DNA of 64,000 nt from NCBI GenBank assembly GCA_035221665.1, contig CM069168.1, forward strand, positions 6,386,001-6,450,000, in the 5' to 3' direction. The notes under the pieces are model-generated. The model searched no databases and had not been told where the DNA came from. It worked only from the letters and a program-made list of their open reading frames with translations. The position numbers and the translations under genes were made by a program. Shown here one piece after another: positions 10,076-62,300 of the stretch (position 1 is the first letter of the stretch; every line of letters begins with the position of its first letter). This DNA is from Okamejei kenojei. Taxonomy: Eukaryota.

Positions 10076-11827
10076 GAAGCAAAATGCTGAAGGAACTCAG
10101 TGGGTCAGGCAGCATCTGTGGAAGCAGAAGCATTATCGATGTTTCTGGGTGAGACCCTGCAATAGGAACTGAATTCTTCCACTGGTTGTCTTTCCAGATT
10201 CCAGTCTCAGGTCTTCAGATGAAAGACACTTCCTCCAATTTTGCACCATTCCTTCGCTACCTGACTTTGATGCAGAGACAACAACCTGGCTACTCAACAC
10301 CCGGCTTGAGATCTAACTATTCCTTTCGTTTATGTTTCATTCGCAAGAGGAAGACTACTTGGCTGAAGTGTCAGCCTGGATTTTGTGCGCATGTTGCTGT
10401 GACAAAGGACTGCACTCGTCCAAAATTTACCAAAAGCCCTGCTTGCATATCAAAATTAGATTAAACATTTCCTGTATAGCAGAAACATGAAGCTATAATT
10501 GATCACAAAAGCAATTTGAAACCCAGCATCATTGTAACAATGTAAGAAAAGAAACTGCAGATGATGGTTTATACCAAAGATAGACATGGGGGCATAGCAG
10601 TAGAGCTACTGACTTATAGAGCCAGAGACCCGGGTTCGATCCTGAGTATGGGTGCTGTCTGTACGGAGTTTGTACGTTCTCTCCGTGACGTGCGTGTGTG
10701 TTCTCCGGGTGATTCTATTATCTATTAGCTTTGGTTTCCTCCCACACTCCAAAGATGTACAGGTTTGCAGGTTAATTGGCTTGTATAAATGTAAAACTGT
10801 CTCCATTATGCGTAGGGTAGTGTTAATGTGCAAGGATCGCTGGTCGGTACTGACTCGGTGGGCTGAAGGGCCTGTTTCCGCATTGTATCTCTAAACTAAA
10901 CTGAACTAAGCAAAATGCTGGAGTAACTCAGCAAATCAGGCATCATCTCTGGAGAAAATGGGTAGGTGGTGTTTCGAGTTTAATCAGACATCTTCAGCCT
11001 AAAGGGTCCTGACCCGAAACGTCAACCCATCCATTTTCTCCAGAGATGATGCATGACCCACTGAGTCACTGCATTTTGTGTCTATCATTTGAAAAATACT
11101 TCTGGATGAGCAGCTAGATTACTGTTTTGACCAGAACCTTTACTTGAGAACACCAAGACTCCCTGGAAGGGTCTCGACCAGAAATGTCACCCATTCCTTC
11201 TCTCCAGATATGCTGGCTATCCCGCTGAGTTACTCCAGCATTTTGTGTCTATCTTCGAAACGTTGGTCTTTTCAAAAAGCGATTGACATTAACCACTGAA
11301 AAATTATCCTAGTAATAGTCATTGTATTAATGTTGCCGTTAGTTTAAACTAGTTTAGATGTAGCATTGTCCACGCCGACCAGCGATCGTCCATTCACACA
11401 CCGTTCTACACACCTTACGCCATAGGCGCAATGTACAGAGTCCAATTACCCTACAAACCCAAAGCTCTATGGGATGTGGGAGGAAACCGGAGCATCCAGA
11501 GGAAACCCACACGGCCACAGGGAGAACGTGCAGACTCCACACAGACAGCATCAGGGGTCAGGATTGAACCTGGGTTACTGGCGCAGTGAAACAGCGACTC
11601 TAACAGCTGTGCCACTGTGCCATTCTAACCAACTACTTTTTCGGATATGTCCCAGACTCGGTCCTGAAACCCATCTGTAAATCGTCCAAACAATAAAGTG
11701 CTGGAGGAGCTCAGAGGGTCAAGTACCATCTGTGGAGGGAAATAGACTGGCAAAGTTTCTGGTCAGGATCCTTCTTCAACCTCAATCTGAAACATCGCCT
11801 GTCCATACCATTCTCACTCAGGCCTAC

Positions 11828-11899
11828 CTTTAGAGTACGATATCTCTCATTCTGGAGTATATTTCCAACTTCACTACAAGTTCCATCTTCAAGGATTTC
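11828..11899 (-). CDS. POLM: POLM coding exon 5
   Basis: 72 nt, AG/GT; EILEDGTCSEVGNILQNERYRTLK. Confidence 0.92.
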
Positions 11900-12042
11900 C
11901 TGCAGCAAAGAATAAGGAGACTTTTCTTCATTTCTTGCAAATAGCCAGAACAGCAACTCTCAATCTTGACATTTGCTAATCTTAATTTTTCCTCTGGAAA
12001 GTAATTTCCTTTTTCTGCATCAACATTAAGACTTAAGTGACT

Positions 12043-12181
12043 TCTTCTTCTTGCGTATGGCGTGCACGGCCTGAAGTTGTCGGACAACTTGTTCTATTTG
12101 ATGTTATTTGATTGTGCGCGGCAGGTTGATTGCATTCGTCGAAACAGGGCGGACCACGTGAAGGTTGCAATCTCCCACCCC
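12043..12181 (-). mobile_element. Short non-autonomous retroposon (RTE-type (GAA)n tail) with a ribozyme head
   Basis: Exact 12-bp TSD ACTTAAGTGACT (12031-12042, 12182-12193); minus-strand 3' end ...CATACGCAAGAAGAAGA. Confidence 0.85.
12128..12181 (-). ncRNA. Minimal HDV-like (CPEB3-like) self-cleaving ribozyme, predicted
   Basis: GGGGTGG(P1) GA GATTGCA(P2) ACC(P3) TTCACGT(L3) GGT(P3') CCGCCCT(P1', G1.U wobble) GTTTCGA C GAA TGCAATC(P2'); P4 absent. Confidence 0.8.
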
Positions 12182-12284
12182 ACTTAAGTGACTACAATGG
12201 AAGTACTAGTCCATATAATTAGCAGTTATTCTGCTGGATATCCAAGGAATGTGACAGACCATAGGAATCATATCATGCCATTAC

Positions 12285-12455
12285 CTTAATCACCTTTCTG
12301 GAATGGACGCCAAGACTGGGAATCCCTTGAAGGTCTTCCATTTTGGTCACGGTGTACGGCAAAGACTTTAGAATTGAGGATGCTCTTGAGAATGCCAAGT
12401 ATCGCCCTTCACTCTCACTTAACTCTGCACTTTCAGCCAGAACATTCAATGCTTC
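12285..12455 (-). CDS. POLM: POLM coding exon 4 (8-kDa domain)
   Basis: 171 nt, AG/GT; EALNVLAESAELSESEGRYLAFSRASSILKSLPYTVTKMEDLQGIPSLGVHSRKVIK. Confidence 0.92.
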
Positions 12456-12514
12456 CTAAAGATCAAGACAAAAGATTAATCTCAATCCATTTTATAATGG
12501 ATAAAATATATATA

Positions 12515-12892
12515 TATATAAAACATATAAAATTCTTAAGGGATTGGACAGGCTAGGTGCAGGGAAAATGTTCCCGATGTTGAGGGAGTCCAGAACCAGG
12601 GGTCGCAGTTTAAGAATAAGGGGTAGGCCATTTAGGACTGAGATGAGGAAAAACGTTTTCACCCAGAGAGTTGTGAATCTGTGGAATTCTCTGCCACAGA
12701 AGGCAGTGGAGGCTAATTCACTGGAGGTATTCAAGAGAGTTAGATTTAGCTCTTGGGGCTAAATGAATGAAGGGATATGGGGGAAAAGCAGGAACGGGGT
12801 ACTGATTCTGGATGTTGCCATGATCATATTGAATGGCAGTGCTTGCTCAAAGGGCCGAATGGCCTACTCTTGCACCTATTCTCTATGTTTCT
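12515..12892 (+). mobile_element. CR1 LINE 3' fragment (similar copies at ~4670-5085, 16500-16860, 47310-47690, 48670-48980, 49490-49990, 50320-50720, 55930-56245, 59440-59800)
   Basis: KMFPMLRESRTRGRSLRIRGRPFRTEMRKNVFTQRVVNLWNSLPQKAVEA and the shared 3' UTR. Confidence 0.8.
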
Positions 12893-13646
12893 ATTTAGAG
12901 AAGTCCATTGCAGTGTATACATTTGGACATGGCCAATTTTTAGCACAATGATACTCCAGTAATCTGATATCAGTGTGGAATTCCAGATGGTTTAATGTCT
13001 GGCTCACTTAAGACCTTTGCACACTTCCCTCTTACTGTGGCCCCGGTTCCTGTGCTGCCTTCCTCTTGCTGTGAAACCTGTTCCACAGTCCCTTCCACCC
13101 TCTAGAGCCCTGCTTCCTTCCTGACCTGACTCTGTTTTCCAAGGTTCCTTGAGATTTACAAGTGCATTGTTTCACAAGCTCTCCTGGGTCATTGGTACAT
13201 TTATTATTGTACTATTTTTTTAAAGCGTGAACTAGCAGCGTGTTGGATTATTATTGGAATAAATCCAATAACCCAGACAATCTGCAAGCCCAACACCAAA
13301 GCCCCAGGCTTGCATGATTCATGGAGTTGTGACGTAACATTCTCAGGTATTCAAACAATTGCTCACGTTATCCACTACATACATATTGAATCATAAGAAC
13401 TCTTCCTTTTTCATCTGTTTCAACAGCCACCATCCCACATACAATTCTGACTGTGAATATTGTGAGAGTCATGTCACAACTGTGTTCTCAAATGACTGAG
13501 GCATTTTACATGCATTTTGTAAACGGGTCCAATAATGAATGTGAGCAGCACCCTCATTCTTCGGAAAATGCCAACAAGCTCTGAAATAATTCCCGCCTAA
13601 GGTTTGGGGTCAGAGAGAGTGGGCTGTGTTGGATGTTGATCGTTAC

Positions 13647-13742
13647 CGTAAATAACATGTTTTTATTCCTTAGCGTTGTCCTTCTTTGACAGGCATATGA
13701 TGAAATAGGTGCCTCACTGGTTGCAACAGCTTCTGCCGATAC
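13647..13742 (-). CDS. POLM: POLM coding exon 3
   Basis: 96 nt, AG/GT flanks; VSAEAVATSEAPISSYACQRRTTLRNKNMLFT contains the YACQR motif of POLM/TdT. Confidence 0.9.
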
Positions 13743-15957
13743 CTAAAAATTCAACATAATTGGCAAGCATTCAATATTTCTGACAAAAGAAAACATCCCA
13801 AACCCCTTGAAAATAAAAAAAAGACCAATCATTAATGAAAAGCATGGTCATCATTCGAGATGTTCTCGACTCCCGTAGCCGGCGGCGTTTGAGCCCTCCG
13901 CATCGGGGCGATCAGCTCCTGCAGTGGAGGGGATGTCAGCTCCCCCGCGCCGGCGATCAAACCTCGCATTGGGAGTGGTCGAGCCTCTGTGGCATTGGAG
14001 CTCCCGACTAGCCTCTCCCGCGATTGCGAGCTCTCGATGTAAAGTCCACAAGCCATGGTTGGAGCGATACCAGGCAAGGGATCGGCTCCGATGTTAAGTC
14101 AATACCACACGGTGGGGCTCCGTCAGTCCGAGGAGGTTTCCAGCTCCATCAATGGTAGGCCGCAGAGCGACCGGAGATATGATCCGTAAAAAAAAAAAAG
14201 CATCTCCAGCCAGGTAAGAAACTGAAAAAAAAGTTTCCCCCGACCCCCTCCCCCTACATAAAACAAACCAGAGAACATTTACACAAACTTTTAAAATGCA
14301 CTAAAAATTAAATAAAAGATGAAAAAACAGACAGACTGTTGTTGATTGAGCAGGCTCCCAGCTCAAATAAGAACCAATGTAATCCGATGTATCTATGAGC
14401 TCTAGGGACACAATGAACGGTAGATGCTGGAATCTTGAACCAAAGATAAAGTTCTGAACCTGCTCAGCGGGTCAGGCAGCATCTTTGGAAGATATGGGCT
14501 GGTGACACTTTGGGTCAGACTCTTCTTCAGTACTTTGGAATTTGTTCACTCAACTTTAAAAATCTGCTGGCCGATGTCTAAATGGGTGGTTTTGGGTGAT
14601 CGACGATTGGAATGATAGTACAGATAACTACAGCGCAGGCAATGGTGTCCATAAATGCCGATTGTCTGCTTTAAACCAAGAAAGTGATTCAATTCACCCC
14701 AACAACCTAACGGTCACTCCACGAAACGATGAGTTGGTTTCAAATACACAGTTATTTTTAAACAAAATATGTATTTTTGTTCCTGCAAGCTAAAAAGACT
14801 AAATGCTGTTTGTTACAAGTGTCGATCGAAGCAATTGCTTGTCAATTTCAATGGCCTCCCACAGTTGTAGTTTAGTTTATTGTCACTTGTACCGAGTGAA
14901 AAGCTTTTGTTGTGTGCTAACCAGTCAGTGGAGAGACACAAACACAAAGAGATTACAATTCAACCATTTACAGTGTGCAGATACATGATAAGGGAATAAC
15001 GTTTAGTACAAGATAAAGCCAGTAAAATCCAATCAAAGAAAGTCCGAGGGTCTCCAAACGAGATGGACTGTAGTTTGGGCCTGCTCTCTCGCAGTGTACC
15101 AAGCAGTCTGTGTTTTTAAAGAGACAGTGGTGGATAATTACTGTAGTGATGCTCCGTTATACAGAGGTCCATAAGAATGAGGGTAGACTGTCATCTATTA
15201 ACTGGTAAACAATGATTTAATTTGGCTTGATTCTGGAGTATTATTGCTCATATTAACTTCCAAGAGCTGGCTTACAAATGCATCTAAACTTTCTAGACAC
15301 AGACCTGGAAGGTGGCCCTTATAGAAGTGTGGTTACATTCCACTGGTTGCCTGGAATCCACACAGCTGAACTTTTCATTCACTGTGCATGCCTCAAAACA
15401 TTGGTCAGGCGTGTCTTGATACAATGAAAACCAAAACAAAGTTGAAAAATGGTTAACGGGTGGATATTTTACAGTAACTTCAGATTTCCCTTAACATTTC
15501 CAACATCAATAGAATTGCGGTCGTGTGTTTGAAGGAATACATTCTTCTTGGCTTGGCCAGCGCAAATATAAACAATAAGCAAGGAACTTGATCAATCAGG
15601 TACACCAGTCCATTGGATCCTTGACCTTAACTGTTTAATTTAGAGATACAGCATGGAAATAGGCCCTTTGGTCCACTGAGTCCGCACCCACCAGTAATCC
15701 CCGCACACTATCACCATCCTACACACACTAGGGACAATTTACAATATTACCAAACCTATTATGTCATTGAAATGTGCGTGGAAACCGAAGCACCCGGATA
15801 AAACCCACAATCTTTAGATATGTAAAAAGGAAAAGATTAGTGAAGACAAATGTAGGTCCCTTACAATCAGAGACAGGTGAATTTATAATGGGGAAACAAA
15901 GAAATGGCAGAACCGTTAAGCGAGTACTTTGGTTCTGCCTTCACTAAGGATGACTAA

Positions 15958-17718: not shown

Positions 17719-18910
17719 GAATGCAAGGGTTACTTGAAGTTAGCGAAATTCATAATGCTGGATTGTAAGCTGCCCAAGCTAAATATTAGTTTAGTTTAGT
17801 ATAAAGCTGAAACTCGCATTAAAGTGGCTGCTGAACTCACTTCCTGATACAGACAGATCAGACCCTGCTCAGTTTCCAAAAAGTTTTAAAATAGTTGAAA
17901 TTAAGGACACTTTGGTCATGATTCAGGCTGTCCCTGCAGACCGCTGTCTCCATCACTGATGGAGAAGCGTTGAACCTTATGGGACTCCTGGTTCCTAATG
18001 CCTCCTCTCATGAACAGGATCTGAGGCCAATCTCTATTGCCCTCCACATCCTGTCCCCTCACCAGTCCCGTCAGAACATAGAGTAGTACAGCCCAGGGCG
18101 GCAGGTGGCACAGTGGTAGAGCTACTGCCTTATAGCACCAGAGACCCGGGTTCGATCCTGACATGCAGGTCACATTCTCCCAGTGTTCCTGGACCTGGAG
18201 TTTGTCCATCAGCAACATTTGGTTATGGACAGCTGCTACACCGGAGAAAGCCAGCAGACAGACTGCTTGACCTCTCACTACATTGATGGCCTTCCAGTCA
18301 CTGTTGCTTCCAAATGGGATCAACGTGGATACAGAGCCAGATATTGAGGGTGAACTATGCGATTATAGCTATCAATATCAACAATGACCTAATCATGAAT
18401 CAAACCTTCCTGTTGCATTTGACAAAATATCGCAAACTAGGCCCGAACCCCAAACGTCACCTATCCGTTCCTTCCACAAATGCGGCATGGAGGCGCAGCA
18501 GTAGAGTTCCTGCCCTACAGCGCTTTCAGTGCCAGGAACGCGGGTTCGATCTGTATGGGTGCTGTCTGTACGGAGTACGTACATTCTCCCTGTGAACACG
18601 TGGGTTTTCAGCAAGATTTTTGGTTTCCTCCTCCACTCCAAAGACATACAGGTTTGTAGGTTAATTGGCTTGGTTATGAATGTAAAATTGTCCCTGATGT
18701 GTGTAGACAGTGTTAATGTGCGGGGACCCAGCCCAAAGCGCCTGTTTCCACACTGTATCTCCAAACTAAACTAAGATGCTGCATGACCTGCCAACATTGT
18801 ATTTTATTCAAGATTTCAGCATCTGCAGTTCCTTGCATCTCAAAAAATGAATACCTACACTTTTAAAAAATTATTAAATTGTGTTATCCAAGAAAGTTTT
18901 CATTAAATAC

Positions 18911-35396: not shown

Positions 35397-36997
35397 CAGT
35401 GGCTTGTAAAAGTTTTCATACCCCTTGAACTTTTCCACATTTTGTCACGTTACAACCACAAACGTAAATGTATTTTATTGGGATTTTATGTGACAGACCA
35501 ACATAAAGTGGTGCATAATTGTGAAGGGGAAGGAAAATGATACATGGTTTCCAAATTTTATTACAAATAAAAAACTGAAAAGTGTGGCATGCAAAAGTAT
35601 TCAGCCCCCCTGAGTCAATACTTTGTAGAACCACCTTTCGCTGCAATTGCAGCTGCAAGTCTTTTGGGGTATGTCTCTGACAGTTTTGCACATCTAGAGA
35701 CTGAAATTTTTGCCCATTCTTCTTTGCAAAATAGCTCAAGCTCAGTCAGATTGGATGGAGAGCGCCTGTGAACAGCAATTTCCAAGGCTTGCCAGAGATT
35801 CTCAATTGGATTTAGGTCTGGACTTTGACTGGGCCATTCTAACACATGAATATGCTTTGATCTAAACCATTCCATTGTAGCTCTGGCTGTATTTTTAGGG
35901 TTGTTTTCCTGCTGGAAGATGAACCTCCGCCCCAGTCTCAAGTCTTTTGCCGACTCTAACAGGTTTTCTTCCAAGATTGCCCTGTATTTGGCACCATCCA
36001 TCTTCTCATCAACTCTGACCAGCTTCCCTGTCCCTGCTGAAGAAAAGCATCCCCACAGCATGATGCTGCCACCACCATGTTTCACAGTGGGGATGCTGTG
36101 TTCATGGTGATGTGCAGTGTTAGTTTTCCGCCACACATAGCGTTTTGCATTTAGGCCAAAAACTTCAATTTTGGTCTCATCAGACCAGATGTTTGCTGTG
36201 TCCCCCACATGGCTTGTGGCAAACTGCAAACGGGACTTCTTATGGCTTTGTTTCAACAATGGCTTTGTTCTTGCCACTCTTCCATAAAGGCCCGATTTGT
36301 GGAATGCACGTCTAATAGTTGTCCTGTGGACAGATTCTCCCACCTGAGCTGTGGATCTCTGCAGCTCCTCCAGAGTTACCATGGGCCTCTTGGCTGCTTC
36401 TCTGGTCAATGCTCTCCTTGCCCGGCCTATCAGTTTAGGTGGACGGCCATGTCTTGGTAGGTTTGCAGTTGTGCCATACTCTTTATATTTTCGGATGATG
36501 GATTGAACAGTGCTCCGTGAGATGTTCAAAGTTTGGGATTTAATTTTATAACCTAACCCTGCTTTAAACTTCTCCACAACTTTATCCCTGACCTGTCTGG
36601 TGTGTTCCTTGGGCTTCATGATGCTGTTTGTTCATTAATGTTCTCTAACAAACCTCTGAGGCCTTCACAGAACAGCTGTATTTATACTGAGATTAGATTA
36701 CACACAAGTGGACTCTATTTACTAATTAGGTGATTCTGAAGGCAATTGGTTGTACTGGATTTTATTTAGGGGTATCAGAGTAAAGGGAGCTGAATACTTT
36801 TGCATGCCACACTTTTCAGTTTTTTATTTGTAAAACAATTTGAAAACCATGTATCATTTTCCTTCCATTTCACAATTATGAACCACTTTGTGTTGGTCTA
36901 TCACATAAAATCCCAATAAAATACATTTACATTTGTGGTTGTAACGTGACAAAATGTGGAAAAGTTCAAGGGGTATGAAAACTTTTGCAAGCCACTG
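35397..36997 (-). mobile_element. Tc1/mariner DNA transposon, Passport/PPTN-like (IR/DR)
   Basis: 213-bp TIRs (35397-35609, 36785-36997) starting CAGTGGCTTG; TA TSD on both sides; transposase ORF inside. Confidence 0.95.
35615..36619 (-). CDS. Tc1 DD34E transposase, open frame but probably inactive
   Basis: 334 aa: paired-like HTH with GRPPK, WSDETK, WPSQSPDLNPIE; 5-aa deletion before WSDE, and the second catalytic Asp motif QQDNDPKH reads QQENNPKN. Confidence 0.85.
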   Translation of the reverse strand: MKPKEHTRQVRDKVVEKFKAGLGYKIKSQTLNISRSTVQSIIRKYKEYGTTANLPRHGRPPKLIGRARRALTREAAKRPMVTLEELQRSTAQVGESVHRTTIRRAFHKSGLYGRVARTKPLLKQSHKKSRLQFATSHVGDTANIWSDETKIEVFGLNAKRYVWRKTNTAHHHEHSIPTVKHGGGSIMLWGCFSSAGTGKLVRVDEKMDGAKYRAILEENLLESAKDLRLGRRFIFQQENNPKNTARATMEWFRSKHIHVLEWPSQSPDLNPIENLWQALEIAVHRRSPSNLTELELFCKEEWAKISVSRCAKLSETYPKRLAAAIAAKGGSTKY

Positions 36998-59300: not shown

Positions 59301-62300
59301 TCATATCGAGACCCTTCTTCAGACTTCTTCCTCCTGCTGGTTCAATGTTAGTTTATTGTCACATGTACCTAACTGTCATTGCATCCAGTTAAATGGCAAT
59401 CCTGCTATCCTCGGGCACAATCATACTGAATACAAGCTCAGGAGGCCGAGGGTGATTTTATTAAGGTGTACAAGATCACAAGAAGAATTGGTACGGTAAA
59501 TGCACAGAATCGTTTACCCAGAGTAGGGACATCGAAGCTTAAGATATGGGTTTAAGTTGAGGTGAGAAAAAATTATTAGGAAGTTGAGGGGTAACTTTTA
59601 CACACTGATAGGTGTATGGTATGAGCTGCTGGAAGAGGTGGTTGAGGCAGGTACTCTCACAATGTTTAAGAAACATTTAGACAGGTACATGGATAAGATA
59701 GGATTAGAAGGATGTGGGCCAAGCGCAGGCAGGTGGGATTAGTGTAGATGGGGCATGTTGGTCAGCCTGGGCAAGTTGGGCTGATGGGCCTGTTTCCACG
59801 CTGTGACTGTGCGTGTGTGTGTGAGAGAGCGTGTAGCTCCGTGCATGCTTGCGAATCTGTGCGCATTTGTACCACACAAGACCACACAGAGTCACTACAC
59901 AAAAGTCGCCACATTTTAAGTGCAACCTGTATCCTTCAAGTCTTAAAATAAAAAACAAATGTTAGTTGCATCCTGGCCATAAAGGCCCGTTGCCCTGGCG
60001 ATGGCACTGGGCCGGAGTTGCAGGGGTCAGCCTGGCCCAATGACGTGACGATGTTACCTGAACTTTCACGCTGACCTGCTGATTGCTCCAGCAATTTGTT
60101 TCTATTTCTTGTAAACTTGCATCTGCCTTTCCATGTGTCCATATCTATGCTTAACGTCCAAGGTTGTTTGCTTAGGATATGAATTAAATCATTTAGCATG
60201 GCTCTTTCCTTGTTCCATGCAACTTTCAGACATACTTAATGCACGTTAGAGTCTTCAAAGCATTGCAAGATAGACGCACAAAATCTGGATTAACTCAGCT
60301 GGTCAGACAGCATGTCTTGAGAAAAGGAATAAATGACATTTTAGGTCTGAAGAAGGGTTGAGACTGGAAAGGTCACCTGTTCCTTTTCTCCAGAGATGGT
60401 GTCTTACCCGCTGAGTTACTCCAGCTTATTGTGTTTATCTTCAGTTTAAACCCGCATCTACAGTTGCTCCCTACACATAAATGCATTGCAATAGCCGCTG
60501 GGCATGCTTGTGTGGTTTAGGGGCCAGCGTTGACCAGAGTTGGGTGGTATCAGAATTGGGAATGTAATATATGTGTGGACATTTCATACTGTGCACTCTA
60601 ATGTTTGAGTTCCCTTTTTAAGTTTGTACGTGACAAGGAGCAAGATGTGGTAAGTTGATGTTGGCGAGGTCCCAGGCTCAAAGCCAGTTCTGAATAACAG
60701 CTGCCTTCAGTAACTGGGTGGCGCAGCTGTAAAGTTCCTGCGTTACAGCGCCAGAGACCAGGGTTCCATCCTCCTTACGGGTGATGTCTGTGCGGAGTTT
60801 GCACGTTCTCCCTGCGACCGTATGGGTTTTCTCAGAGTTCTGGTTTCCTCCCACGCTCCAAAGACGTGTAGGCTTCTGGATGAATTGGCTTCAGTAAAAT
60901 TGTAAATTGTCCCTGGTGTGTAATCTCCTTCATGATCCTTTGAATGAACAAAGATGTGGATTTTTTTTTTTCCCCCTGTAAAAGCTAAGTAGAAACCTGG
61001 TGTGCATACCTTGTACCCCTGGTCAATATGTTTGATGGAGCCATAGTCATTGGCCCCTGTGCCCAATTCCACAATGCCGACCAAACTGCTCAGTCTACAC
61101 AAGTCCCACCTGCCGCCGTTTGGCCATATCCCTCTAAACCTTTCCTGCCCATTCCCTGTCCAAATGTTTTTTAAATATTGTTTTCGTACCTGCCTCAACT
61201 ACCTCCTCCAGTAGCTTCTTTCATAAAGTCACCATCCTCTGAATGAAAAAGATGCCACTCGGGTTCCAATTAAATGTTTTCCCTCTCATCTTAAACCTCT
61301 GCCCCCTGGTTCTCGATTTCTCCCCACCCCCCCATGCATTCACCCTATCCATCTCAGCATTACTTCTTGTGGCTTTCCAATGTTCCACAGGAAGGTCTAG
61401 AGGAGATGTGAATCATGCCAAGGAACGTGACCAAGGTCCAATGCAAGGTGTATGTACGCAGGAACAGGGACAGTAATATAGGACTTCTGTAGCTATCCTC
61501 TGAATCATCCTTTCCACTCCCTCCCCTTTTCCTGCCATCCCCCTCCCGCTCCCAAATAAATCACTAGAGATTTGGAGGCACAGCGTGAAAACTGGCCCTT
61601 CAGCCCACCGAGCCTGCGCCGACCAGCGATCGCCCGTCCACCAGATCTATCCTATGCACTTGGGACAATTTACAGAAGCCAATTAACCTACCAACCTGCA
61701 CTCCTTTGGAGCGTGGCAGGAAACCGGAGCACCCGGAGAAAACCCACGTGGTCACCGGGAGAACGTACAAAGTCCATACACACAGCACCCAAGGTCAGGA
61801 TAGGATCCGGGTCTCTGGTGCTGTAAGGCAGCAGCTTTACCACTGCGACTCTGTGCTGATCCTTTGGGGGGGACTTGAAGTTAAAATAATGTTCGATGCT
61901 AACTTAAAAAGAATCCGTGCGTAGTATTAAGAGACTGAATTCCACGGTGCTTTCTGACCAGAACGTGTGTATGTTGTCTCTACTCCATGGCAATAACCAT
62001 CTTTTCATTTAGTAGTAAAGTTACAAAATTTTGAGATTTAAAAAAATCAAGTCTGCAATTTATCCCATCAGATAAAGCATAAAAATAAGTTTAATTTGAC
62101 ACCTAATTCACTTTCATATCTTCAGTATTAAAGTTATGGACATTTTCATTCTCGGAAATTAGCATCTTGTTCCCTATTGCTTTTCCATTGACTTAACACA
62201 AAAGCTGTGATCGAGGACAGTCAAAAGCCCATAACTTTCTTAAACATTAAGAGAACTGAGAAAAATTTTCAGTTATTATAGATTGAAGCATTCTGAAACA

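What the first reader, a model, noticed from the sequence alone, without database searches (positions are those of the whole stretch)
12043..12193. A 139-bp SINE whose head is a minimal HDV/CPEB3-like ribozyme, starting exactly at the predicted cleavage site
Seen in sequence: an insertion bounded by a perfect 12-bp TSD (ACTTAAGTGACT). Its minus-strand first 54 nt form an HDV double pseudoknot: P1 GGGGTGG/CCGCCCT with the G1.U wobble, P2 GATTGCA/TGCAATC, P3 ACC/GGT, L3 TTCACGT, then the catalytic C followed by GAA. P4 is reduced to GTTTCGA. The element's first base (12181) is G1, the base left 3' of self-cleavage, and the element ends in (GAA)n. Established knowledge: HDV-like ribozymes process the 5' ends of R2/RTE-class retrotransposon RNAs; I recall TTCACGT as the L3 of the mammalian CPEB3 ribozyme; P4-less versions are known mainly from microbiome and phage sequences. 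Inference: a promoterless, non-tRNA SINE family in a cartilaginous fish that cuts itself out of host transcripts and borrows an RTE-type RT. I do not know of a description of it.
Basis: partly seen in the sequence, partly recalled or inferred. Interest (0 to 1): 0.9.

Follow-up and report, generated by a model that had tools for sequence, protein, structure and literature searches.

The report
Ribozyme-headed mini retroposon in polymerase intron
A 139-bp jumping-gene copy, one member of a very abundant family, begins exactly where a tiny HDV/CPEB3-type self-cutting RNA motif would cut itself free; the design is already known from other retrotransposons, but this version is unusually small, sits in a vertebrate, and has not been shown to cut.

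Summary
Window 12043-12181 (minus strand) is a 139-bp insertion between perfect 12-bp target-site duplications. Its first 54 nt fit a strict HDV-ribozyme descriptor, the only such hit in the window and with none in 87 Mb of shuffles. The fit is P1 7 bp with G1.U36, P2 7 bp, P3 3 bp, L3 UUCACGU as in CPEB3, C44-GAA, and no real P4.

Laying contigs from three related species showed 12,000-14,500 contigs per run carrying the family. Unrelated flanks begin at 12181/12182, which is G1, and (GAA)n tails vary in length. The insertion at this site is shared by all three species.

The element lies in sense orientation in a 385-nt intron of a Pol mu/TdT-type gene that is still spliced. It has no tRNA or Pol III-type head, and Rfam gives no hit.

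Best reading: a non-autonomous "bipartite LINE"-type retroposon, like R2 SIDEs, NARTc and RTE-N, with a minimal CPEB3-type HDV-like ribozyme head. Catalysis, the partner LINE (RTE is a guess) and covariation are unproven.

The parts
12182..12193 (.). Target-site duplication, copy upstream of the element's 5' end (ACTTAAGTGACT on + strand)
   Evidence: identical to 12031-12042, and the bases just outside the two copies differ.
12031..12042 (.). Target-site duplication, copy downstream of the element's tail
12128..12181 (-). Head, nt 1-54: candidate minimal HDV/CPEB3-type self-cleaving ribozyme; predicted cut 5' of G1 (12181)
   Evidence: Descriptor hit is unique in the window; 0 hits in 86.9 Mb of shuffles at P2>=7; nested MFE is P1+P3; family 5' ends pile at 12181/12182.
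12175..12181 (-). P1 5' strand (nt 1-7, GGGGUGG)
   Evidence: Pairs 7 of 7 with 12146-12152 (G1.U36, U5.G32); no family variant at 5% or more of depth.
12166..12172 (-). P2 5' strand (nt 10-16), after the 2-nt J1/2 (12173-12174)
   Evidence: 7 Watson-Crick pairs with 12128-12134; duplex -7.4 kcal/mol; no family variant at 5% or more.
12153..12165 (-). P3 (nt 17-19/27-29) enclosing L3 UUCACGU (nt 20-26, 12156-12162)
   Evidence: L3 is identical to the CPEB3 L3. The only family variants are the CpG transitions C24>U and G25>A, about 5% each.
12146..12152 (-). P1 3' strand (nt 30-36, CCGCCCU)
   Evidence: Family variants C31>U (5%) and G32>A (14%) both keep pairing: G6.U31 and U5-A32.
12135..12145 (-). 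J1/4 G37 U38, 5-nt linker replacing P4 (nt 39-43), catalytic-position C44 (12138), G45 A46 A47
   Evidence: C44, A46 and A47 show no variant at 5% or more. The 'N' position 45 is G about 50%, U 41%, A 9% in the family, which fits C-N-R-A.
12128..12134 (-). P2 3' strand (nt 48-54)
12091..12127 (-). Linker/body nt 55-91, A-rich with a duplicated AUCAAAUA motif; variable in length among subfamilies
   Evidence: Loose ends at 12102 and 12112 with related consensus, and internal 'skips'. This copy differs from the family majority at nt 61, 64 and 79.
12074..12090 (-). 7-bp hairpin nt 92-108 with loop CCG; candidate recognition element for the partner reverse transcriptase
   Evidence: Folding. The only variable position, nt 101, lies in the loop: G/U/A.
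12043..12073 (-). 3' region nt 109-129 and (AAG)3A tail nt 130-139
   Evidence: In other copies the tail continues as (CTT)n on the + strand (loose-end consensus).
11900..12284 (-). Host intron (385 nt, GT..AG) of a family-X polymerase gene (Pol mu/TdT type); the element is in sense orientation
   Evidence: RNA-run contigs cover 11821-11904 and 12284-12400 but not the intron. Flanking exons match Pol mu/TdT. Splice sites were read.

Best explanation
This is one old, fixed copy of a very abundant family of roughly 130-150-bp non-autonomous non-LTR retroposons. Each has only two working modules. The first is a 54-nt 5' head that folds as a minimal, P4-less HDV-like ribozyme with a CPEB3-type core. 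The second is a 3' hairpin plus a (GAA)n tail. The proposed life cycle has four steps. A copy lying in sense orientation in any transcribed region is read through by RNA polymerase II (inferred). The head folds and cuts immediately 5' of G1, freeing an RNA whose first base is G1 (inferred from the motif, not assayed). A partner LINE reverse transcriptase recognises the 3' hairpin and tail and copies the RNA by target-primed reverse transcription at an AT-rich site (inferred; partner unidentified, RTE/Rex3-like is only a guess). Because the cDNA runs to the cut end, each new copy starts exactly at G1 and is flanked by a roughly 12-bp duplication (shown for this copy and for the family). This copy sits in a Pol mu/TdT-type intron, belongs to a minor and probably older subfamily, and is shared by three related species. 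The host mRNA is still spliced.
For: There is a perfect 12-bp TSD around exactly 139 bp. The family is huge: 14,568, 12,653 and 13,395 contigs at 80% or more alike in three species, with summed word depth of 1e5-2e6 on 12031-12198 against 5-20 in the flanks. Unrelated flanks (agreement about 0.34) start at 12181/12182: 308+353, 287+338 and 250+353 contigs. No other position in X1 exceeds 76 contigs, apart from the tail boundary at 12041/12043. The head is the only hit of a strict HDV descriptor in the window, with 0 hits in 86.9 Mb of shuffles at equal stringency. The nested MFE equals P1+P3. L3 is identical to CPEB3 and the numbering is the same: U36 is the site of the human U36C SNP. In the family, C44, A46, A47, P2, P3 and the P1 5' strand show no variant at 5% or more. 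The two variable P1 positions keep pairing, and the free position 45 varies. There is no tRNA or Pol III head. [quoted passage not shown] The P1 7 bp, short J1/2, P2 about 7 bp layout is the usual one (PMC4908430).
Against: There is no cleavage assay and no raw reads, so no RNA 5' ends are known. Rfam HDV, CPEB3 and drz models give no hit even at E<=10; this is expected for a P4-less pseudoknot but is still negative. True covariation is absent because the family is too uniform: the two pair-preserving changes are CpG transitions that would preserve pairing anyway. P1.1 is a single G-C pair plus U.U, and P4 is missing, so activity may be low. In the RNA run, contigs crossing the G1 boundary are not depleted relative to DNA (5'/3' boundary counts 54/24 in RNA against 661/357 in DNA). 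This gives no sign of efficient cutting of most copies, although contigs are a poor measure. A precise 5' end would also follow from a fixed transcription start. No autonomous partner was found.
Confidence: 0.7

Rival explanations
1. The family is a real retroposon, but the HDV-like fold of its head is a look-alike. The constant 5' end comes from a fixed transcription start, either an unrecognised internal Pol III or Pol II promoter or a head derived from an uncatalogued small RNA.
For: Precise 5' ends are also typical of Pol III SINEs. Rfam ribozyme models do not hit. There is no compensatory covariation. Descriptor hits occur by chance at about 0.1-0.5 per Mb at looser stringency. RNA contigs cross the G1 boundary freely. 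A weak B-box-like GTTTCGACGAA sits at nt 37-47.
Against: There is no hit to any of 4227 Rfam families, including tRNA, 5S, 7SL and snRNAs, and no ARAGORN tRNA. The best A and B box matches have 3 mismatches of 9 and are too close together. The match is at full stringency: 17 of 17 pairs, G1.U, C-N-R-A, and L3, J1/4 and J4/2 as in CPEB3. It starts on the very base that the TSD and family ends define as nt 1.
Confidence: 0.2
2. This particular copy has been co-opted. Like the CPEB3 ribozyme, it cuts the nascent Pol mu/TdT-type pre-mRNA inside a short intron in competition with splicing and so tunes the gene's output. That would explain why it is kept in three species with an intact head.
For: It lies in sense orientation in a 385-nt intron, 103 nt after the donor site. 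The site is filled in organisms A, B and D. The head of this copy has no difference from the family majority, while the remaining 85 nt have six. The first-reader note s1-880123 proposes this.
Against: Sharing by species only about 2.4% diverged is expected for any neutral fixed insertion. The six body differences look like subfamily markers (C where the majority has T at CpG sites), not post-insertion decay, so the contrast is not evidence of selection. The mRNA is spliced normally in the RNA run. With this many copies, many introns will hold sense copies by chance.
Confidence: 0.05

Closest known systems
R2 SIDEs (short internally deleted R2 elements of Drosophila; PMC3414825)
   Same: Non-coding derivatives that keep only a 5' HDV-like ribozyme, which sets the 5' end by cutting a co-transcript, and the 3' end needed for target-primed reverse transcription.
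   Different: SIDEs insert site-specifically in 28S rDNA, are few in number, have full-size ribozymes with P4, and have a known parent. This family is dispersed and very abundant, occurs in a vertebrate, has no P4, and has no identified parent.
NARTc / L1Tc Pr77 (L1TcRz) and related SIDER/ingi elements of trypanosomatids (PMC3383444, PMC4035085)
   Same: A SINE-like non-autonomous element shares an HDV-like ribozyme as its first roughly 77 nt with its LINE, and the family is dispersed in many copies.
   Different: Pr77 is also an internal promoter. It occurs in protists, has a different ribozyme sequence and is larger. No promoter function is indicated here.
Bipartite non-autonomous RTE derivatives (RTE-N, RTESINE1/2, MAR4, WALLSI3; PMC5786205)
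   Same: Vertebrate elements made only of a LINE 5' end plus a LINE 3' end. Their retention of the exact 5' end has been attributed to predicted 5' ribozymes, and they are presumed to be Pol II transcripts.
   Different: They are usually 200-500 bp with a demonstrated RTE parent. Here the element is 139 bp, relation to RTE is untested, and the ribozyme makes up 40% of the element.
Mammalian CPEB3 intronic ribozyme (PMC10274809, PMC8233481)
   Same: Identical L3 (UUCACGU) and the same numbering from G1 to U36. By my recollection of the human sequence it also has the same G37 U38 (single G-C P1.1 next to U.U) and C-G-A-A-U at J4/2. Both are intronic and in sense orientation.
   Different: CPEB3 is a single-copy, conserved, mammal-only locus with a 7-bp P4 and different P1, P2 and P3 sequences. 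The Rfam CPEB3 model does not hit this element. This one is a mobile-element head.
Minimal HDV-like ribozymes (drz-Mtgn) and theta ribozymes (PMC10879173)
   Same: HDV double-pseudoknot core with the P4 domain missing.
   Different: Those are reported almost entirely (about 99%) from bacteriophages and metagenomes, next to tRNAs. This one heads a vertebrate retroposon.

Membership tests
HDV-like (delta) self-cleaving ribozymes | Nested double pseudoknot in the order P1-P2-P3-L3-P3'-P1'-(P4)-J4/2-P2', with P1 of 6-7 bp, P3 of 3 bp and P2 of about 7 bp | tested here: met
   17 of 17 pairs at nt 1-54. It is the only descriptor hit in the window and there are none in 86.9 Mb of shuffles at P2>=7. 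The MFE gives P1+P3. This shows sequence compatibility only.
HDV-like (delta) self-cleaving ribozymes | Cleavage site at the first nucleotide of P1, with G1 in a G.U wobble | tested here: met
   G1.U36 is present. G1 is the first base of the element by the TSD and by family ends at 12181/12182. The cleavage itself was not observed.
HDV-like (delta) self-cleaving ribozymes | Catalytic C in J4/2 (C-N-R-A) directly before the P2 3' strand | tested here: met
   C44 G45 A46 A47. C44, A46 and A47 have no variant at 5% or more of family depth, and position 45 varies G/U/A.
HDV-like (delta) self-cleaving ribozymes | L3 with U at position 1, C at 3 and G at 6, with P1.1 pairing to J1/4 | tested here: met
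   U20, C22 and G25 are present. C22-G37 can pair, but the second P1.1 position is U21.U38, so P1.1 is weak.
HDV-like (delta) self-cleaving ribozymes | P4 helix (dispensable; absent in 'minimal' members) | tested here: not met
   Only the 5 nt UUCGA lie between J1/4 and C44. This places it with the minimal P4-less variants (PMC10879173).
HDV-like (delta) self-cleaving ribozymes | Mg2+-dependent self-scission leaving a 5'-OH on G1 | not testable with these tools
   Only contigs were available and no raw reads, so no RNA ends could be read.
HDV-like (delta) self-cleaving ribozymes | Compensatory covariation in the helices | tested here: inconclusive
   Only C31>U and G32>A vary in helices. Both keep pairing but are CpG transitions. 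No aligned copies could be obtained.
CPEB3 ribozyme family (Rfam CPEB3 model, mammalian orthologues) | Match to the family model and an orthologous position in the CPEB3 intron | tested here: not met
   There is no Rfam hit at E<=10. The locus is a Pol mu/TdT-type intron and the sequence is a multicopy retroposon. Only the core (L3, spacing) is shared.
SINE in the strict sense (Pol III-transcribed) | Head derived from tRNA, 5S, 7SL or snRNA with an internal Pol III promoter | tested here: not met
   No Rfam family hits at E<=10 in 11900-12350. ARAGORN finds nothing. The best A and B box matches each have 3 mismatches.
SINE in the strict sense (Pol III-transcribed) | Short, non-coding, high copy number, LINE-type tail, TSD | tested here: met
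Bipartite non-autonomous LINE (SIDE / NARTc / RTE-N type) | 5' end and 3' end shared with an autonomous LINE of the same genome | not testable with these tools
   There is no similar head or tail elsewhere in the window and no LINE RT among ORFs of 130 aa or more.
Bipartite non-autonomous LINE (SIDE / NARTc / RTE-N type) | Retains the exact LINE-type 5' terminus (ribozyme) and a 3' recognition module, with few 5'-truncated copies | tested here: met
   5' boundaries concentrate at 12181/12182. There is a hairpin plus (GAA)n tail.

The most novel reading that the evidence does not exclude
CPEB3-type ribozymes may be, in origin, heads of vertebrate retroposons. This family, or its unseen LINE parent, would then belong to the lineage from which the mammalian CPEB3 intronic ribozyme was exapted. 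It shares the unusual core UUCACGU / G-U / C-G-A-A and identical spacing from G1 to U38. It would also show that P4-less 'minimal' HDV ribozymes are a native module of eukaryotic retroelements and not only of phages.
Probability: 0.15. Interest if true: 0.85.

Novelty: new variant of a known kind. Interest (0 to 1): 0.6.

Why it matters
If the head cuts, this would be about the smallest self-defining retroposon known: a 54-nt ribozyme plus a roughly 50-nt reverse-transcriptase handle. It would have amplified to a very high copy number in a vertebrate without any promoter of its own. It would extend P4-less minimal HDV ribozymes from phages to animal genomes. It would scatter thousands of potential RNA-cutting sites through introns and UTRs. 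It would also give a concrete, testable candidate source for the CPEB3 ribozyme, whose origin is unknown. If the head does not cut, the family is simply an unclassified abundant short retroposon.

Tried and rejected
- **Rfam.** cmscan of 11900-12350 at E<=10 and of the whole window at gathering thresholds gave no ribozyme, tRNA or small-RNA hit.
- **Other copies in the window.** Pattern search with 3 mismatches and blastn with word size 7 found none.
- **Other collections.** Exact 20-24-mers of the head were not found in metagenome contigs, genome contigs or viral contigs.
- **The look-up of encoding contigs.** No multi-copy alignment, covariance model or the count of structure pairs test could therefore be made.
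- **Relaxed descriptor.** It gave only a few low-quality hits elsewhere (18553, 35471, 47645, 48148, 55608, 61785), which I judged to be chance.
- **Partner LINE.** ORFs of 130 aa or more hold a Tc1 transposase and a retroviral env-like piece but no LINE RT. The link to Rex3/RTE rests only on a loose tail likeness, and I do not adopt it.
- **Thermodynamic z-scores.** They are not significant, because nested folding cannot score the pseudoknot. I did not count this as evidence either way.
- **A 7-mer literature search.** It was uninformative.
- **Papers not held.** Ruminski 2011, Webb 2009 and Webb & Luptak 2011 were not available.
- **Depth as copy number.** The tool warns against reading it that way, so I give only an order of magnitude.
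- **Consensus and N.** I built no family consensus.

Full report
**What is there.**
The + strand carries ACTTAAGTGACT at 12031-12042 and again at 12182-12193. The bases just outside the two copies differ, so the duplication is exactly 12 bp and encloses exactly 139 bp, 12043-12181.

Read on the minus strand (nt = 12182 - position), the insert begins with G at 12181 and ends in (AAG)3A. It occurs once in the window.

**The head.**
Nt 1-54 can be drawn in the HDV topology without a single mismatch.

| Element | Positions | Notes |
|---|---|---|
| P1 | nt 1-7 / 30-36 | 7 pairs, with G1.U36 and U5.G32 wobbles |
| J1/2 | nt 8-9 | 2 nt |
| P2 | nt 10-16 / 48-54 | 7 Watson-Crick pairs |
| P3 | nt 17-19 / 27-29 | 3 pairs |
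| L3 | nt 20-26 | UUCACGU |
| J1/4 | nt 37-38 | G37 U38 |
| Linker | nt 39-43 | UUCGA, where P4 would be |
| J4/2 | nt 44-47 | C44 G45 A46 A47, running straight into the P2 3' strand |

- Nested folding of the 54-mer returns exactly P1+P3. P2 is the pseudoknot strand that such folding cannot score, which is why the z-scores say nothing.
- A descriptor I wrote requires P1 of 7 bp with G1.U, P3 of 3 bp, L3 of 7-8 nt with C at position 3, G in J1/4, C-N-R-A, and P2 adjacent to P3. It hits the 64-kb window once, here, with P2 = 7.
- 1358 dinucleotide-preserving shuffles of a 64-kb strand (86.9 Mb) gave 46 hits with P2>=4, 10 with P2>=6 and none with P2>=7. The match is far beyond chance for a window.
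- At looser settings a Gb-size genome would hold chance hits. The real weight therefore lies in the match starting on the very base that independent evidence marks as nt 1 of a mobile element.

**The CPEB3 likeness.**
- The mouse CPEB3 'ribozyme cleaved' primer GTTCACGTCGCGGCC (PMC10274809) confirms that L3 is identical.
- The human SNP U36C (PMC8233481) shows that the numbering G1...U36 is the same.
- By my own recollection of the human sequence, which is a lead and not a test, CPEB3 also has G37 U38 (a single G-C P1.1 beside U.U) and C-G-A-A-U.
- By contrast, the conserved R2 core quoted in PMC5035012 (CCUCCUCGUGG) has the commoner UCCUCGU loop.
- The P1 7 bp, short J1/2, P2 about 7 bp layout is the usual one for the family (PMC4908430).
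- P4-less 'minimal' members are known, but about 99% come from phages (PMC10879173).
- Rfam's HDV, CPEB3 and drz models give no hit even at E<=10. That is unsurprising for a P4-less pseudoknot, but it rules out membership of the CPEB3 family as modelled.

**It is a family, and copies start at G1.**
One run search found the source species (organism A) and four related organisms.

I laid contigs of A (DNA), A (a run guessed to be RNA), B and D on 11800-12400 at 80% or more likeness.

- *Abundance.* The counts were 14,568, 548, 12,653 and 13,395 contigs. Summed word depth was 1e5-2e6 over 12031-12198, against about 5-20 in the flanks. The tool warns that this is not a copy number, so I take it only as 'tens of thousands or more'.
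- *5' boundary.* Contigs that continue into unrelated sequence (consensus agreement about 0.34) leave the element at 12181 or 12182. The counts were 308+353 in A, 287+338 (plus 71 at 12180) in B, 250+353 (plus 77 at 12183) in D, and 31+23 in the RNA run.
- *3' boundary.* At the other side contigs leave at 12041/12043, where the loose consensus continues as (CTT)n, meaning longer (AAG)n tails.
- *Other boundaries.* No other boundary in A is supported by more than 76 contigs.

**Variation in the family (share of depth).**
- Inside the head, six positions vary at about 5% or more:

| Position | Change | Share of depth | Comment |
|---|---|---|---|
| C24 | >U | about 5% | CpG in L3 |
| G25 | >A | about 5% | CpG in L3 |
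| C31 | >U | 5% | gives G6.U31, pairing kept |
| G32 | >A | 14% | gives U5-A32, pairing kept |
| G42 | >A | 11% | in the linker |
| G45 | >U / >A | 41% / 9% | the free N of C-N-R-A |

- C44, A46, A47, all of P2 and P3, and the P1 5' strand show nothing at this threshold.
- This pattern is what a working ribozyme would show, but it is weak evidence. The family is young and uniform, the measure is dominated by abundant words, and both pair-preserving changes are CpG transitions that would preserve pairing in any case. There is no true compensatory change.
- This copy differs from the majority at nt 61, 64, 79, 101, 109 and 114. Two of these are CpG cytosines where the majority has T, so the copy belongs to a minor and probably older subfamily.
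- The linker between head and hairpin varies in length among subfamilies (loose ends at 12102 and 12112).

**Age and host context.**
- In B and D, flank contigs run from unique sequence into the element on both sides (records 25 and 32, and 9 and 16). The same insertion is therefore present in all three species, whose flanks differ by about 2.4%.
- The flanking exons encode a family-X polymerase. The exon at 9203-9412 matches Pol mu best (1.6e-13). The exon at 12285-12455 matches TdT and Pol mu about equally.
- The intron is 11900-12284 on the minus strand, with AAG|GTAAT and a pyrimidine tract before CAG|.
- The element is in sense orientation, 103 nt after the donor.
- In the RNA-like run, contigs cover both exons at equal depth and skip the intron. 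That run is therefore RNA, and the gene is spliced normally.
- The same run holds 548 contigs with family members, many embedded in longer transcripts. Contigs crossing the G1 boundary are not rarer relative to the tail boundary than in DNA (54/24 against 661/357). There is thus no sign that most copies are cut efficiently, though contigs cannot show RNA ends or amounts.

**What it is not.**
- There is no tRNA, no hit to any small-RNA family, and no credible A or B box. It is not a classical Pol III SINE.
- No LINE reverse transcriptase, and no second sequence with this head or tail, lies in the window.
- The RTE guess rests on a loose likeness of ...ACGCAAGAAGAAGA to the Rex3 tail GCG(GAA)2(GATG)n (PMC6274825), which I do not regard as evidence.

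**What it is like.**
- The architecture is a ribozyme-bearing LINE 5' end joined to a LINE 3' end with nothing between. This is the 'bipartite non-autonomous LINE' of Kojima (PMC5786205).
- That paper notes that RTE, Ingi and R2 make such derivatives. [quoted passage not shown]
- R2 SIDEs (PMC3414825) and NARTc (PMC3383444, PMC4035085) are the worked examples. The kind is therefore known.
- Four things are new here: the minimal P4-less ribozyme with a CPEB3-type core, the very small size, the vertebrate host, and the very high abundance.
- Six searches of the held library found no description of such a family. Dfam and Repbase could not be consulted.

**Verdict.**
I put about 0.7 on 'non-autonomous retroposon whose 5' end is made by a minimal HDV-like ribozyme'. 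I put about 0.2 on 'retroposon with a look-alike head and a fixed transcription start', and about 0.05 on co-option of this copy as a regulator of the polymerase gene.

First readers of this scan noted other copies of the same family on other pieces of this genome. Those notes are unchecked, but they agree with the family size measured here.

Noticed in passing
window 12182 (base just 5' of G1 on the element strand): More family junction contigs match through 12182 than stop at 12181 (353 against 308 in A, 338 against 287 in B, 353 against 250 in D). About half of the copies therefore have T directly before G1, against roughly a third expected from the AT-rich flanks. This may reflect a target-site or 5'-joining preference; it is unexplained.
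   Followed up: no
window 12120-12179 (-), nt 3-8 with nt 57-62: In the full 139-mer the nested MFE pairs nt 3-8 with nt 57-62 around P2, which competes with P1. The family majority has G at nt 61, which would break this pairing, so the competitor looks specific to this copy.
   Followed up: partly
window 12136-12177 versus 12052-12135: Summed depth over the head is about twice that of the body and four times that of the tail-proximal part, in all four runs. Either other families or the parent LINE share the head, or the more variable body aligns less well.
   Followed up: no
window 35615-36619 (-): An uninterrupted 334-aa ORF with Tc1/Sleeping-Beauty-type transposase domains (HTH_Tnp_Tc3_2 at 1.5e-23, DDE_3 at 2.6e-10), possibly a young DNA transposon.
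   Followed up: no
   Followed up: no
window 18553-18700 (+) and about 61655-61785 (-): Two copies of another repeat sharing ...GTACG(T)TCTCCC.GTGA.CACGTGGGTTTTC... gave low-quality hits to the relaxed HDV descriptor. They are probably a different SINE or LINE core and not ribozymes.
   Followed up: no
window 12338: Both runs of the source species (DNA and RNA) read T where the window has C, inside the polymerase exon. This is an allele or an assembly difference.
   Followed up: no
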